DNA from: Octopus vulgaris
Lineage: Eukaryota
Direction of reading: 5' to 3'
Assembly: GCA_951406725.2 (NCBI GenBank)
Contig: OX597824.1
Coordinates: forward strand, 32,384,001 to 32,446,000
Length of the DNA stretch: 62,000 nt
Shown one piece after another: positions 3,547 to 43,469 of this stretch (positions within the stretch are counted from its first letter, which is position 1; every line of letters begins with the position of its first letter). A program made the translations under genes and the position numbers. Under the pieces are notes generated by a model. That model searched no databases, had not been told where the DNA came from, and was given only the letters and a program-made list of their open reading frames with translations.

Positions 3547-4049
3547 CTGAAATGATAAATTGTATTCAATGTTTTAAATGATTTAATTTGGTTAAAATCA
3601 AAATCAGATGTTGAAGAAACTAAAAGCAGAGTGCATTAATGATTGAGTAAAAATTTAAGAACTGATGTCTCTAAAGTTTAAAATATTTCATTAAAATCTA
3701 AATCCTCTTACAATCATATTTCCAAAATTCAATTCACTTTGAAAATAATAAAAAAATTGGGGATATTTTTGTAAAATAATTTTTCCATATATCAATTGTT
3801 ATTTGGCCCCATACTGATCAAGTGAGACATGATCAAGGTGTTCATCTGTGGCCATCCTGTCTTTTTTAATTGTATGTAAGACCACATAATTCAACTACAT
3901 TTTCTTATTTAAGATGGTTATGTGTAATTTTGAGGGAGGTTTCTAATAACTTGAGTGCCCATGTAAAAGCTCCCCTGTTGGTTCCCAATTTAGCTGTATA
4001 CAACTAAAGGCTTGTTTTGTATTTTTTGAATCAAATTTAAAATAGTAGC

Positions 4050-4598
4050 TATGATACCAGTGCCGGTGGCACATAAGAGAACCATCCAAACGTGGCCGTT
4101 GCCAGCGCTGCCTCGACTGGCTTCCGTGCTGGTGGCACGTAAAAAGCACCATCCGATCGTGGCCGTTTGCCAGCCTTGTTTGGCACGTAAAAAGCACCCA
4201 CTACACTCATGGAGTGGTTGGCGTTAGGAAGGGCATCCAGCCGTAGAAACATTGCCAGATCAGACTGGGCCTGGTGCAGCCTTCTGGCTTCCCAGACCCC
4301 AGTTGCACCGTCCAACCCATGCCAGCATGGAAAGCGGACGCTAAACGATGATGATGATGATGATGATGATATCCCATGTGGGGGGGGGGGGGCATTAAAA
4401 AAGCACCTATGCTGGTGCCACGTAAGAAACACCCAGTACACTTTGTAGAATGGTTGGCATTAGGAAGAGCACCCACCTTGCCAAAACACACAATTAAAGC
4501 CTGGTGCCACTCTCCAGCTTGCCGGCCCTGTCAAACTGCCCAACCCATGCCAGTATGGAAAATGGATGTTAAATGATGATGATGATGATGATGATGAT
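4050..4598 (+). mobile_element. Two tandem SINE or RTE-tail copies ending in (GAT)n
   Basis: ggcacgtaaaaagcacc repeats, then ggcgttaggaagggcatccagc...aacccatgc.agcatggaaa...(gat)n, twice. The second ends about 25 nt from the donor at 4623. Confidence 0.85.
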
Positions 4599-4939: not shown

Positions 4940-5665
4940 AGATAGCGAGAGAGAAAGGAGAGAGAGAGAGAGAAGGCAGAAGGTAGTTGATAAACTTTTC
5001 CTTATTCCTTATTATTTTGAACTCAGTAGAATAGCAAAGAACAGCACATGAAGACATTGTTTAAATTACATATTTTTCCTCACTTTAGATGTATTATTAT
5101 ATTATTTGATGTCATTGGGAGAAAAAGTAGAACAAAACAAAATGAAACTGGTTGTTTGTAAATATTAGGAGAAAGTAGCAGTTGACAAAAGATAAATTCA
5201 ACAAAAAAATGATTTCTTTTAAAATCAGTTTTATTGTGACAAAGACTATAGTGCTTTTAGTCATAAATCCTGGAAATATTTGAATATGATACTTTATATA
5301 AGTGTTACAAAGTTGAGTAGCTTATTTTTGCACTTCCCTTAATTCTAATTCTTGTGACATACCATAAAATTTAGAGCCTTATATATTGGTTTCAAATCTT
5401 TCTTTCCAGTGAATTATTAGTCTTTAGAAGTACCGCAAGATTTCATGAGTATTTTATGGAGTAGGGAAAGTAAGATAATGGAATGGTAAAGCAATTAATT
5501 GTCTACTTTGTAATATATGTGATGCTATTATTTAGTCCCAAGACAAACTTGACTGATCAAAGTCATGAGTAATGGCAATTCATATATATATATACATATA
5601 ACTTAGAATAACTTAGAAAGGTTTTGGCCAGTATTGGCCCAGGCCATGTCTAACTTAATAGCACC

Positions 5666-5701
<36 letters not shown>

Positions 5702-5702
5702 G

Positions 5703-5750
<48 letters not shown>

Positions 5751-5876
5751 CACATATATATATACACATATATATATATACATATATATATATATACATA
5801 TATATATATACATATATATATACATATATATATATATACACATATATATATATACATATATATATACATATATACA

Positions 5877-6915
<1,039 letters not shown>

Positions 6916-42200: not shown

Positions 42201-42635
42201 ACATACACATACATACATACGTATTTATGTGAACCTAACAAATAACAAAATAATAAAAACAAACTGGTAAACTAGACATGTTAGTTAATGTTCTAAAAGT
42301 TATAACAAAAAAGTGTTACGAAAGAGGAATTATATTAAACAAGTTAATAAGAAAACAATAAAAATGTTTAACATTTTGTGTTCATACTAAATTCTAGATA
42401 TATATTAATCTAAAATATTTAGAAATTGTTTTAGGAGCTAAATGTTTGGAATAACACTTTCATTTCTACTTGTGAATTTTGCTTAAGAAATATTTGGGAT
42501 TTCTTAACAAAACTTGAGTAGATTATGTTATATAGGAAAATGGTGCGGTGATGAGGAATAGGAGAATATAAGTTATATAACTAAAAATGAAATGCTGAGG
42601 CATTTTGATGTCACTAAACTGATATTTAACTAGGC

Positions 42636-42695
<60 letters not shown>

Positions 42696-42730
42696 CCAGT
42701 TCTGTATTTAAGAAATGAGGAATTGTGTAC

Positions 42731-42898
42731 ATTATTTACATTATTTACATTTGACGGATATTTGTCCTCATCTTGTTTGCTCTTAACACAACGTTTCGGC
42801 TGACATTACCCTCCAGCCTTCTTCAGGTATCTTGGGGAAATTTCGAACCTGGGTTCTCATTCCTAAGGTATTTTTCGATGTTATTATTATTATTATTA

Positions 42899-42955
<57 letters not shown>

Positions 42956-43092
42956 TCCCTGCCTGGAATCGAACTCAGAATCTTGGGGTTAGTAGCCCGT
43001 GCACTTAACCACTATGCCATATGCTCACGAATTGTGTTAATAACAAGCAAGATGAGGACAAATATCCGTCAAATGTAAATAATGTAAATAAT
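42731..43092 (-). mobile_element. tRNA-headed, hammerhead-bearing element with 61-bp inverted ends
   Basis: IRs at 42731-42791 and 43032-43092 (3 mismatches). tRNA-like head 43026-42957 with A box TGGCATAGTGG and B box GAGTTCGATTCC. Then (AAT)n and a hammerhead at 42831-42785. Confidence 0.85.
42785..42831 (-). ncRNA. Minimal type I hammerhead ribozyme (Penelope-type)
   Basis: GATAC-CTGAAGA-A-GGCTGG-AGGGTAATG-TCAGCC-GAAAC-GTT-GTGTT. Intact core, stem I with wobbles, palindromic ACGT in place of stem III, GUU triplet. Confidence 0.7.
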
Positions 43093-43469
43093 TATTATTA
43101 TCATTATTATTAAGATGATGGTGGTAGTGGTTGAGGTGATGATGATGATGATGGTGATGAGTTTATATTGTGTAGCTGCTTCTCTGTTTTACCAGTTCCA
43201 GATTATTGCACAGTTGCACAAAATACTAAACTTAGGTTGATGTATAAAGAATTGCAGTTTTGTTAATTTAAACCTGGATACATTTCTTGAATAAACTTTT
43301 ATTTAGATATATGTATTTGGTATAAATTTTAGTCTAATGATTTATGCTAATGATTTTTGCTAATGATTTAGGCTGATAATTTATACTAATGATTTTACTT
43401 TTACAATTTGTTTATATATTTTAGTTTGTCAAATTAAATATGAAGAAAAAAGCAAATTAACAATTTTGG

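What the first reader, a model, noticed from the sequence alone, without database searches (positions are those of the whole stretch)
42731..43092. tRNA-headed SINE-like element ending in a Penelope-type hammerhead, with an inverted copy of its tail that stops at the cleavage site
Seen: on the minus strand the order is inverted tail copy (61 bp), tRNA-like head with A and B boxes, (AAT)n, hammerhead (CTGAAGA, stem II, GAAAC, GTT), then the 61-bp tail. The inverted copy ends 2 nt into the GUU triplet, essentially at the predicted scissile bond. Established: SINEs normally borrow the 3' end of a partner LINE. Penelope-like elements (PLEs) carry minimal type I hammerheads with palindromic helix III and often have inverted partial terminal repeats. 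Inference: this is a Pol III-driven non-autonomous element mobilised by PLE machinery, a SINE/retrozyme hybrid. I cannot tell whether it is already catalogued.
Basis: partly seen in the sequence, partly recalled or inferred. Interest (0 to 1): 0.85.

Follow-up and report, generated by a model that had tools for sequence, protein, structure and literature searches.

The report
Octopus SINE born from Penelope element
This is one copy of a very abundant short mobile element of the common octopus: the detached 3' end (tRNA-like promoter, hammerhead ribozyme motif, tail) of a Penelope-like retrotransposon. It shows how such a retrotransposon can make its own SINE, but the match between its inverted repeat and the ribozyme cut site is not a general rule.

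Summary
On the minus strand the order is a 61-nt inverted tail (58/61 identical), a tRNA-like head with A and B boxes, (AAT)n, a hammerhead core, and the tail. The element runs 34 nt further than reported, to about 42697.

The genome is Octopus vulgaris. The family has thousands of copies (3365 exact canonical tails, 1147 exact heads).

The hammerhead has the hallmarks of Penelope-like-element (PLE) minimal hammerheads: an unpaired A after A9, a 6-bp helix II, and a palindromic ACGU in place of helix III. No Rfam model detects it.

About half of the copies carry an inverted 5'-truncated twin, and about half carry the 31-35-nt 3' extension. Both are PLE insertion signatures. Target-site duplications enclose twin plus full copy.

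New here: one third of heads continue upstream into a PLE 3'UTR and an RT-endonuclease ORF. A second assembly has the same PLE lineage with the same tRNA-like, hammerhead and tail 3'UTR. So the "SINE" is the PLE's own 3' module.

Two thirds of heads start within 8 nt of the tRNA-like start, which suggests Pol III transcripts.

Inverted-copy boundaries are scattered, so there is no general stop at the cleavage site. There is a hot spot of palindromic junctions 2-5 nt 3' of it (29 loci against 0 at a control palindrome).

It is not a retrozyme. Verdict: partly supported; a new variant of a known kind.

The parts
43093..43102 (.). Upstream flank, part of an (AAT)n target. GATAATAATA(AT) recurs at the other end and is a possible target-site duplication of 10-12 bp.
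   Evidence: It is ambiguous because the target is a microsatellite. Clean duplications around the same architecture are seen in L008 (AGCACATTTTGT) and L093 (TTGGGTCAGTTT).
43032..43092 (+). Inverted 5'-truncated twin copy: the 61-nt tail only, with no 3' extension. Its inner end lies 2 nt past the complement of the predicted cleavage site.
   Evidence: I1, 95%; 58/61. Its outer end starts in the AAUAAU of the tail repeat, next to (ATT)n of the target, which gives microhomology.
43027..43031 (-). Junction or leader of 5 nt (TTCGT). It corresponds to the CCCGT/CCCAC leader that precedes the head in most copies.
42952..43026 (-). tRNA-like head. A box at 43019-43009, B box at 42976-42965.
   Evidence: 93% identical to the family consensus; tRNA model 15 bits; box positions +8 and +51.
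42881..42951 (-). Internal (AAT)n microsatellite, variable in length between copies.
42832..42880 (-). Spacer ('body'): CATCGAAAAATACCTTAGGAATGAGAACCCAGGTTCGAAATTTCCCCAA.
   Evidence: The GGTTCGAA-TTCC part is conserved in the second species.
42785..42831 (-). Minimal type I hammerhead motif of PLE type. The predicted cleavage is between 42790 and 42789.
   Evidence: The features match PMC4209133.
42731..42789 (-). Tail 3' of the cleavage site, ending in (GTAAATAAT)2.
   Evidence: There are 3365 exact canonical 35-mers in the genome.
42697..42730 (-). 3' extension, present in about half of the copies. This is the true 3' end of the element.
   Evidence: It is conserved in the second species. 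It corresponds to the PLE 'tail extension' of PMC8557442.
42685..42696 (.). Downstream flank GATAATAATAAT of the (AAT)n target (possible target-site duplication).

Best explanation
The window holds one insertion unit (about 42697-43092, minus strand) of a non-autonomous retroelement of Octopus vulgaris. That retroelement is the 3' module of a Penelope-like element (PLE).

The parent PLE lineage has an RT plus GIY-YIG-type endonuclease ORF. Its 3'UTR carries, in order: a degenerate tRNA-like sequence with intact A and B boxes, a spacer (in octopus with an (AAT)n), a minimal dimer-type hammerhead, a roughly 60-nt tail with (GTAAATAAT)n, and a roughly 33-nt terminal extension.

Inferred mechanism:
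1. RNA polymerase III starts about 6-7 nt upstream of the tRNA-like +1. It makes a roughly 280-nt or longer RNA, co-terminal with the PLE RNA, that contains no T4 terminator.
2. A PLE RT-endonuclease, acting in trans, recognises the shared 3' end.
3. The endonuclease makes a staggered cut of roughly 11-15 bp, often in AT-rich or microsatellite DNA.
4. Both DNA ends prime cDNA synthesis. One cDNA copies the whole RNA. The other, primed in the AAUAAU repeat of the tail, stays short.
5. The two cDNAs are joined head to head. This gives the inverted 61-nt tail next to the full copy.

The short twin in the window may have been copied from a hammerhead-cleaved 3' fragment, but this is only one of many observed end points.

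Shown: the anatomy, the family, the PLE linkage, the discrete 5' end, the inverted twins and the target-site duplications.

Inferred: Pol III transcription, mobilisation in trans, twin priming and ribozyme activity.
For: Family and unit:
- At least 124 matches among 4036 candidates, and head to tail is always contiguous.
- 3365 exact canonical tails and 1147 exact heads.
- The best copies are 96-99% identical to the consensus.

Genome identity:
- A homologous protein is named Octopus vulgaris and lies on a contig of 135,589,375 bp, the length of G000:C6.

PLE-type hammerhead:
[quoted passage not shown] These are exactly the features listed in PMC4209133.
- 93.6% of cells are paired, against 17-53% when the partners are slid.
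- The pair 10.4-11.4 is U-A in octopus and C-G in the second species.

PLE insertion signatures (PMC8557442):
- An inverted 5'-truncated copy next to about half of 49 copies.
- The extension present at only one end (window, L093).
- Target-site duplications enclosing twin plus full copy in L008 and L093.

Partner:
- 33 of 100 sampled heads continue into the conserved ACTCCATAATTGCCCAC.
- In L066, L069, L030 and L097 this leads into an endonuclease C-terminus.
- There are at least 3640 endonuclease and 3855 RT candidates in the genome.
- RT and endonuclease are colinear in one 569-aa open frame at C2:165608907-165610484.
- Endonuclease, head and canonical tail are colinear at C1:49763368, 49763688 and 49763844.
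- The endonuclease aligns to the Pfam GIY-YIG part of a bona fide PLE ORF with E=2e-6, and the RT-thumb region with E=1e-20.
- Called genes in L100 and L101 carry RVT_1.
- The same 3'UTR architecture is found in the second assembly.

Discrete 5' end:
- 67 of 100 heads lose homology within -8..+1.
- 227 loci have a perfect head-to-head palindrome GCCATATGCCC-RY-GGGCATATGGC.
- The A and B boxes are conserved between species while no cloverleaf is detectable.
- There is no TTTT in the 277-nt consensus. The first TTTT after the window copy is at 42587.
Against: - No RNA data: Pol III transcription, its start site and hammerhead cleavage are all untested.
- No intact partner ORF was seen. The longest open frame is 569 aa among the 150 best-scoring of more than 3600 candidates, so the enzyme source for the young copies is unknown.
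- The abundant intact PLE (L091, with 781-aa frames) shares neither the tail nor a hammerhead.
- Pfam does not call GIY-YIG or RVT_1 on the short degenerate fragments themselves.
- Covariation in the hammerhead is statistically weak: 2 pairs change on both sides, and shuffles reach that in 71 of 500 trials.
- A subfamily of about 650 exact copies has G at the cleavage position and still amplified, so cleavage is not required for mobility.
- The window's own target-site duplication is ambiguous because the target is (AAT)n.
- Only the first 100 rows of each genome pattern search could be inspected.
Confidence: 0.65

Rival explanations
1. There is no SINE. The head-starting copies are ordinary 5'-truncated copies of the PLE itself. 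Their sharp 5' boundary arises because the nascent cDNA end (GCCCGTGGGC) is self-complementary and snaps back, or because the PLE RNA is processed at the tRNA-like structure (RNase P-like). Pol III plays no part.
For: - PLEs are heavily 5'-truncated (PMC8557442).
- The boundary coincides with an intrinsic palindrome, GCCC-AC-GGGC, in the PLE 3'UTR.
- 227 loci carry the snap-back palindrome there.
- 33% of heads are still attached to PLE sequence.
Against: - Twice as many 5' ends fall in 8 nt as in the whole upstream PLE.
- The A and B boxes are conserved across species while the acceptor stem and cloverleaf are not. This argues for promoter function and against an RNase P substrate.
- A start at -6/-7 is where Pol III would start relative to an A box at +8 (established knowledge).
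- Head-starting copies include the youngest ones (96-99% identical), whereas PLE-linked ORFs are decayed.
Confidence: 0.2
2. One reading: the inverted tail ends at the scissile bond because it was reverse-transcribed from the 3' product of hammerhead self-cleavage, so such boundaries record ribozyme activity in vivo.
For: - The window ends at -2. L084 and L092 end exactly at G1.1, joined to head +1. One of 100 sampled heads has the same TTGTTAACACAA-T-GGGC junction as the window.
- Perfect 24-nt tail-to-tail palindromes centred on GTTAAC (+3..+8) occur at 29 loci. There are none at the analogous TTCGAA-centred control.
- The only other place with frequent perfect palindromes is the RNA 5' end at the head (227 loci). 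Snap-back junctions therefore seem to mark RNA 5' ends.
Against: - Boundaries of inverted partners are scattered over the whole element.
- Junction positions from -6 to +10 each hold about 1-6 of the 100 rows listed, once the palindromic GTTAAC class (+2) and the 13-nt deletion class (+9) are set aside. There is no peak at +1.
- About 2 of 32 unbiased cases lie within 3 nt of the site, against about 1 expected.
- The GTTAAC hot spot could equally come from RT pausing at the base of the structured hammerhead, or from the palindrome's closeness to the 3' end.
- PLE minimal hammerheads cleave poorly in vitro, and only as dimers (PMC4209133).
Confidence: 0.3
3. It is an animal (non-LTR) retrozyme: tandem hammerhead-bearing repeats that are cleaved, circularised and copied by rolling-circle reverse transcription.
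For: It has a type I hammerhead with a palindromic helix III. Animal retrozymes are proposed to be non-autonomous PLE derivatives (bioRxiv 10.64898/2026.07.22.740005; PMC7761336).
Against: - Each unit has one hammerhead and the copies are dispersed. Partners are inverted, not direct tandems, and no tandem array was seen in about 50 inspected loci.
- Cleavage would detach the 3' tail rather than excise a unit.
Confidence: 0.04
4. The inverted 61-bp tail and the full copy are two independent insertions that happen to abut.
For: The family is very abundant and prefers microsatellites, so nested or adjacent hits do occur (for example L015, with a 240-bp insertion inside the copy).
Against: - The same architecture recurs in about half of the copies.
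- Target-site duplications enclose both parts in L008 and L093.
- The two arms each differ from the consensus at two positions, consistent with equal age.
Confidence: 0.03

Closest known systems
SMalpha / Sjalpha SINE-like retrotransposons of schistosomes (Ferbeyre et al. 1998, as cited in PMC8490949)
   Same: Both are short, dispersed, high-copy, non-coding retroelements that carry a type I hammerhead. From my own knowledge, SMalpha also has Pol III A and B boxes.
   Different: - SMalpha carries a canonical hammerhead; this element has the PLE minimal type.
- Here the parent PLE is identified and itself contains the tRNA-like head.
- The host phylum differs (Mollusca).
- There is no sequence similarity that I could test.
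Minimal hammerheads in pseudo-LTRs of Penelope-like elements (Cervera and de la Pena 2014, PMC4209133; Lunse et al. 2017)
   Same: [quoted passage not shown]
- A long helix II and a short helix I.
- A palindromic 15.2-16.2 pair, which implies action as a dimer.
- A position near the 3' end of a PLE, and very many dispersed solo copies.
   Different: Here the motif lies downstream of a tRNA-like Pol III-type promoter in the same 3'UTR. Most solo copies start at that promoter rather than at random truncation points.
PLE insertion architecture (Evgen'ev and Arkhipova 2005; Craig et al. 2021, PMC8557442)
   Same: An inverted 5'-truncated copy abutting the 5' end, a 30-40-bp extension present at one end only, a bias towards microsatellite targets, and heavy 5' truncation.
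   Different: That architecture was described for autonomous elements of 3-4 kb. Here it is displayed by a roughly 300-bp module. No pLTR (direct partial tandem) was seen for the module.
Classical tRNA-SINE / LINE partnerships (for example MIR-L2)
   Same: A tRNA-like head with A and B boxes, a 3' end identical to that of an autonomous partner, target-site duplications, and a copy number far above that of the partner's ORF.
   Different: The partner is a PLE (GIY-YIG endonuclease), not an APE or REL LINE. The head is also part of the partner, so the SINE looks like a sub-genomic transcript of its parent rather than a chimera of a tRNA with a LINE tail.
Animal non-LTR retrozymes (Cervera and de la Pena 2020; bioRxiv 10.64898/2026.07.22.740005)
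   Same: A non-autonomous, hammerhead-bearing element proposed to derive from PLEs.
   Different: Retrozymes are tandem arrays that give circular RNAs. This element is dispersed, has a single hammerhead and is headed by a promoter.

Membership tests
Hammerhead ribozyme, type I, PLE minimal variant | Conserved core CUGANGA ... GAAA ... U-H before the cleavage site | tested here: met
   The window has CUGAAGA, GAAA and U16.1-U17. The family consensus has CUGAUGA. The second species has CUGAAGA ... GAAAC-GUU.
Hammerhead ribozyme, type I, PLE minimal variant | Helix II closed by G10.1-C11.1, an extra unpaired nucleotide between 9 and 10.1, and a palindromic 15.2-16.2 in place of helix III (PMC4209133) | tested here: met
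   A-GGCUGG/UCAGCC, then GAAA-CG-UU. The features are listed.
Hammerhead ribozyme, type I, PLE minimal variant | Base pairs supported by covariation | tested here: inconclusive
   93.6% of cells are paired against 17-53% when slid, but only 2 pairs change on both sides (U-A to C-G at 10.4-11.4). Shuffles reach that in 71 of 500 trials, and there are few independent lineages.
Hammerhead ribozyme, type I, PLE minimal variant | Match to a curated hammerhead covariance model | tested here: not met
   No Rfam hit at the gathering threshold or at E<=10. This is expected for variants without helix III, but it remains a negative result.
Hammerhead ribozyme, type I, PLE minimal variant | Self-cleavage | not testable with these tools
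   There is only an indirect genomic footprint.
tRNA-derived SINE | Internal Pol III A and B boxes at tRNA-like spacing in the 5' head | tested here: met
   The A box is at +8 and the B box at +51. Both are conserved in the second species.
tRNA-derived SINE | A discrete 5' end at the head in most copies | tested here: met
   67 of 100 sampled heads lose upstream homology within -8..+1.
tRNA-derived SINE | 3' end shared with an autonomous retrotransposon | tested here: met
   The whole module is the 3'UTR of an RT-endonuclease element.
tRNA-derived SINE | Short, non-coding, high copy number, flanked by target-site duplications | tested here: met
   Target-site duplications are seen in L008 and L093; the window's own is ambiguous.
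tRNA-derived SINE | Transcription by RNA polymerase III | not testable with these tools
   The only indirect support is the absence of a T4 run in the 277-nt consensus.
Penelope-like element (as non-autonomous derivative) | Parent encodes an RT plus a GIY-YIG endonuclease in one ORF | tested here: met
   - RT and endonuclease hits are colinear in a 569-aa open frame.
- The RT-thumb region matches a Pfam-verified PLE ORF at E=1e-20, and the endonuclease matches its GIY-YIG part at E=2e-6.
- RVT_1 is on record for genes in L100 and L101.
- Pfam is negative on the short fragments alone.
Penelope-like element (as non-autonomous derivative) | Inverted 5'-truncated copy at the 5' end, and a 30-40-bp extension at one end | tested here: met
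   The definition is in PMC8557442.
Penelope-like element (as non-autonomous derivative) | Pseudo-LTR (direct partial tandem) | tested here: not met
   No direct tandem of the module was seen in about 50 loci. This was not searched genome-wide.
Animal non-LTR retrozyme | Head-to-tail tandem units, each with a hammerhead, giving unit-length circular RNA | tested here: not met
   Copies are dispersed with one hammerhead each, and their partners are inverted. Circular RNA could not be tested.

The most novel reading that the evidence does not exclude
An octopod lineage of Penelope-like elements keeps a Pol III promoter (a degenerate tRNA with intact A and B boxes) inside its own 3'UTR, upstream of its hammerhead. 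It thereby makes its own SINE as a sub-genomic, 3'-co-terminal transcript, and that SINE has outlived the parent's ORF. In addition, snap-back palindromes in the genome mark RNA 5' ends. These ends include one 2 nt from the hammerhead scissile bond, which would be a genomic footprint of PLE-hammerhead cleavage in vivo.
Probability: 0.35. Interest if true: 0.8.

Novelty: new variant of a known kind. Interest (0 to 1): 0.62.

Why it matters
SINEs are normally explained as chimeras of a Pol III gene with the tail of an APE or REL LINE. As far as I know, current repeat classifications recognise no class of tRNA-SINE with a PLE partner, and I found none in the searchable literature. I could not check Repbase or Dfam.

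Here the promoter, the ribozyme and the tail sit together in the parent's 3'UTR in two species. This offers a concrete route for SINE birth: a sub-genomic transcript of the parent. It also offers a tractable system for two open questions about PLEs. One is what the minimal hammerhead does. The other is how the inverted and extended insertion structures arise. Thousands of roughly 300-bp copies are much easier to analyse than copies of 3-4 kb.

The G17 deletion subfamily is a natural control for the role of cleavage. The family may also account for part of the many "unclassified SINE" families reported for O. vulgaris (PMC13282606).

Tried and rejected
- **Rfam and ARAGORN.** No hammerhead and no tRNA were found.
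- **Pfam GIY-YIG search of the genome, to find the partner.** It returned another, intact PLE family instead (L031-L060, L091). That family has ORF1 plus an ORF2 of 765-781 aa, a 300-bp pLTR and (TA)n targets. It has no hammerhead core and no similarity to the tail, so I rejected it as the sequence partner. It remains a candidate source of enzyme in trans.
- **Querying the genome with the tail alone.** Only SINE copies came back.
- **'Not-this-base' IUPAC patterns to count truncations at the cleavage site.** The first attempt was dominated by a 3-nt deletion subfamily. The second gave the junction spectrum.
- **Pfam on short endonuclease and RT fragments.** Negative. Homology had to be shown by BLASTP against the verified PLE ORF.
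- **L095 as a second-species example.** Its 3' end is cut by an LTR-element insertion.
- **Covariation test.** Weak. The MFE folds recover only helix II.
- **Literature on octopus SINEs OR1, OR2 and OK.** Not retrievable. Lunse et al. 2017 is not held.
- **Further genome DNA.** Neither the 569-aa ORF copy nor more junction loci could therefore be read.
Full report
**1. What is in the window.** Read on the minus strand, the region contains the following, in order:
- an inverted copy of the tail (43092-43032);
- a 5-nt junction;
- a tRNA-like head (43026-42952), with A box TGGCATAGTGG and B box GAGTTCGATTCC;
- (AAT)n (42951-42881);
- a 49-nt spacer;
- a hammerhead motif (42831-42785);
- a tail ending in two GTAAATAAT units (to 42731);

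The two 61-nt arms are 95% complementary, 58/61 identical. ARAGORN finds no tRNA. Rfam finds no family at the gathering threshold. At E<=10 it gives only a 15-bit tRNA match and no hammerhead.

**2. It is a family, and the genome is Octopus vulgaris.** The window lies on a 100-Mb contig of a 2.8-Gb, 227-contig genome. The 362-nt query finds at least 124 matches among 4036 candidates. Most span head to tail (query positions 64-76 to 362) without the contiguous inverted tail. Alignments of 21 and 29 copies give this consensus: head, (AAT)n, AACATCGAAAAATACCTTAGGAATGAGAACCCAGGTTCGAAATTTCCCCAAGATAC, hammerhead, GTGTTAACAACAAACAAGATGAGGACAAATATCCGTCAAAT(GTAAATAAT)1-3. About half of the copies then continue with GTACATAATTCCTCATCTCTTAAATATAGAACTGTA. 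The best copies are 96-99% identical to this consensus. The window copy is 93-96% identical. Exact-match counts are 3365 canonical tails and 1147 heads, so the true copy number is well above this. A homologous protein is named "[Octopus vulgaris]" and lies on a contig of 135,589,375 bp, exactly the length of G000:C6.

**3. The hammerhead.** The consensus reads GAUAC-CUGAUGA-A-GGCUGG-AGGGUAUA-UCAGCC-GAAA-CG-UU|GUGUU. It has every feature that Cervera and de la Pena list for PLE minimal hammerheads beyond the core:
- the G10.1-C11.1 pair;
- a long helix II and a short helix I;
- a palindromic 15.2-16.2 (ACGU), which implies action as a dimer (PMC4209133).

On 35 sequences, 93.6% of the proposed pairs are standard pairs, against 17-53% when the partners are slid. 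Within the family the variation is neutral decay. Between species, pair 10.4-11.4 changes from U-A to C-G, with U.G in one copy. Covariation is too sparse to be significant, and no curated model detects the motif. Activity is untested. Published PLE minimal hammerheads cleave weakly, and only as dimers.

**4. PLE-style insertion anatomy.** Craig et al. describe three features of PLE insertions: an inverted 5'-truncated copy abutting the 5' end, a 30-40-bp extension present at only one end, and a bias towards microsatellite targets (PMC8557442). All three are seen here.
- About half of 49 inspected copies have an inverted partner.
- The extension is present at one end only in the window (direct copy) and in L093 (inverted copy).
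- The window copy sits in (AAT)n.

Target-site duplications enclose the inverted partner plus the full copy in L008 (AGCACATTTTGT) and in L093 (TTGGGTCAGTTT). The composite is therefore one insertion event. The window's own GATAATAATAAT repeat is consistent with this but ambiguous. The window's inverted tail begins exactly in the AAUAAU of the tail repeat, next to target (ATT)n. This suggests priming by microhomology and would explain why it lacks the extension (inference).

**5. The partner, and a surprise.** A Pfam GIY-YIG search first found an abundant intact PLE (L091). It has an ORF1 of 346 aa and an ORF2 of 765 aa with RVT_1 and GIY-YIG. Many copies have 781-aa open frames, and there is a 300-bp pLTR. 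It has no hammerhead and no similarity to the tail.

The real relative appeared when I sampled what lies upstream of 100 exact heads. Thirty-three continue into a conserved ACTCCATAATTGCCCAC. In L066, L069 and L030 this continues into an ORF end...GKTCRPLKIRVEEHRKAV...WDEVKIIDREHHWKIRKLKETAHMLGHNNLLSRLSADMSSIWELV*, about 55 nt upstream of the head.

The evidence that this ORF belongs to a PLE is as follows.
- The peptide has at least 3640 candidate loci in the genome.
- An RT fragment of the same lineage has at least 3855.
- The two are colinear in several loci, and in a single 569-aa open frame at C2:165608907-165610484.
- Endonuclease, head and canonical tail are colinear at C1:49763368, 49763688 and 49763844.
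- The endonuclease aligns with the part of the L091 ORF that Pfam calls GIY-YIG (E=2e-6), and the preceding region aligns with its RT thumb (E=1e-20).

An unrelated 621-bp metagenome contig (L097) shows the same order of endonuclease end, 3'UTR and tRNA-like head.

In a second assembly (ENA ERZ21867824, organism unknown to me), copies of the same lineage have endonucleases 49-62% identical, and RVT_1 is recorded for the called genes. Their 3'UTRs run as follows:
- the stop codon, then about 100 nt;
- a tRNA-like sequence with A box TGGCGTAACGG and B box GGTTCAATCC;
- about 130 nt;
- CUGAAGA-A-GGCCGG-AGGACAUA-UCGGCC-GAAAC-GUU|GUGG;
- a homologous tail;
- a homologous extension, CTTCGTCTCAGAAATTTAGACAAC.

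So the whole "SINE" is the 3' module of a PLE lineage. The hammerhead is the best-conserved part of that 3'UTR.

**6. Is it a SINE?** Sixty-seven of the 100 sampled heads lose upstream homology within -8..+1 of the tRNA-like start. That is twice as many 5' ends in 8 nt as in the entire upstream element. About a quarter of the heads carry an inverted piece of the head itself. The perfect palindrome GCCATATGCCC-RY-GGGCATATGGC occurs at 227 loci. This is what snap-back of a cDNA ending at about -6 (…GCCCGTGGGC-3') would give.

A start 6-7 nt upstream of an A box at +8 is where Pol III starts (established knowledge). The A and B boxes are conserved across species while no cloverleaf is detectable. 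The 277-nt consensus has no T4 run. I therefore favour a Pol III-driven sub-genomic transcript.

The rival explanation, termination or processing of PLE RNA at the intrinsic GCCC-AC-GGGC palindrome, cannot be excluded without RNA data.

The parent ORFs are decayed: the longest open frame is 569 aa among the 150 scored. Module copies reach 99% identity to the consensus, so current mobilisation, if any, must be in trans (inference). This fits the later SINE expansion and earlier Penelope expansion reported for this genome (PMC13282606). That paper does not mention hammerheads.

**7. The cleavage-site coincidence.** The window's inverted tail ends 2 nt beyond the complement of G1.1. Across copies the inner ends of inverted partners lie anywhere: in the terminal repeats, the tail, helix II, the spacer or the head. 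Only L084, L092 and one sampled head end at the site. L092 was found by a search aimed at that site.

A pattern that recovers junctions from -6 to +10 shows about 1-6 events per position per 100 rows and no peak at +1, apart from two classes:
- a recurrent 13-nt internal deletion;
- a perfect tail-to-tail palindrome centred on GTTAAC (+3..+8).

That palindrome occurs at 29 loci. The analogous junction centred on the TTCGAA of the spacer occurs at none. The only other frequent palindromic junction marks the RNA 5' end at the head. The GTTAAC hot spot is therefore compatible with a minor RNA species that begins at the hammerhead cut. In that case the cDNA would end ...GTTAACAC-3' and anneal through GTTAAC. 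It is equally compatible with RT pausing at the base of the structured ribozyme.

A subfamily of about 650 exact copies has lost 3 nt, so that G occupies the cleavage position, against 3365 canonical copies. Cleavage is thus not needed for amplification, and the subfamily offers a natural control.

**8. Comparison and verdict.** The closest known things are these:
- the schistosome SMalpha SINE-like elements with a hammerhead;
- PLE minimal hammerheads (PMC4209133);
- PLE insertion structures (PMC8557442);
- animal retrozymes as PLE derivatives.

It is not a retrozyme, because it forms no tandems and has one hammerhead per unit. I found no description of a tRNA-SINE with a PLE partner, or of a tRNA-like module in a PLE 3'UTR. 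I could not consult Repbase or Dfam. I rate it a new variant of a known kind.

The SINE-on-PLE-machinery idea is supported and extended. The "stops at the cleavage site" idea is reduced to a suggestive hot spot. The retrozyme label is rejected.

**Limits.** There are no RNA data. Only the first 100 rows of each genome-wide pattern search could be seen.

Noticed in passing
G000 genome-wide; for example C1:1380596-1380630: A subfamily has a 3-nt deletion (GAAAC|GTGTTAAC) that puts G at hammerhead position 17, which is predicted to be uncleavable. There are about 650 exact 35-mers, against 3365 canonical ones. At least one such copy lies downstream of a PLE endonuclease (endonuclease at C2:56542175, tail at C2:56542673).
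   Followed up: partly
G000 genome-wide; for example C2:213877111-213877145: A recurrent 13-nt internal deletion joins GCCGAAAC directly to AAACAAGATG between two AAAC repeats. It removes the cleavage site and helix I. It accounts for 11 of the 100 rows listed.
   Followed up: no
L091 (G000:C16:20834500-20842500): An apparently intact, different PLE. It has an ORF1 of 346 aa and an ORF2 of 765 aa (RVT_1 and GIY-YIG). Its 300-bp pseudo-LTRs are 99% identical, and it has tandem 92-93-bp repeats containing TGATGACGTC in the 3' region. It is flanked by (TA)n and has no hammerhead core. Many genomic copies have a 781-aa open frame. It could supply enzyme in trans.
   Followed up: partly
L097 (ENA ERZ23499442, 621-bp contig): A contig from a metagenome assembly is 85% identical at the protein level to the octopus PLE endonuclease end and carries the tRNA-like head. 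Octopod-like DNA is thus present in a 'metagenome'. In this contig the head is followed directly by TGTAAATATTGTAATTAATTGTA, with no (AAT)n or hammerhead before the contig ends.
   Followed up: no
G000:C1:73300024/73300441, 74475930/74476638, 86248231/86248529, 90040435/90040728; L022/L029: Full-length head-to-head inverted dimers of the element, 300-700 bp between the tails. They make up about 8% of the first 100 canonical tails.
   Followed up: no
window 4049-4459 and 5603-5980 (minus strand): Two copies of another repeat family, whose translation reads [32 protein letters not shown]. They lie next to very long (TA)n/(TG)n tracts. The same repeat adjoins element copies in L086 and L026.
   Followed up: no
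L068 and L080 upstream regions: Copies of the element abut, in inverted orientation, a different abundant tRNA-derived SINE (…GGTAAGCAAGCTACTTACCACAGCCACTCC…) that ends in (TA)n/(CA)n. The module seems to insert into or beside other SINE tails.
   Followed up: no
window 43328-43396: A 13-bp tandem repeat (TTTAGNCTAATGA, 4 copies) about 240 bp from the element.
   Followed up: no
L069 (G000:C16:57936838-57940134): A 5'-truncated PLE copy is joined to an inverted head at a 10-nt microhomology. GGCATATGGC occurs both in the head and in the endonuclease coding sequence (the ...AYGKT... region). This chance similarity may promote head-to-ORF junctions.
   Followed up: no
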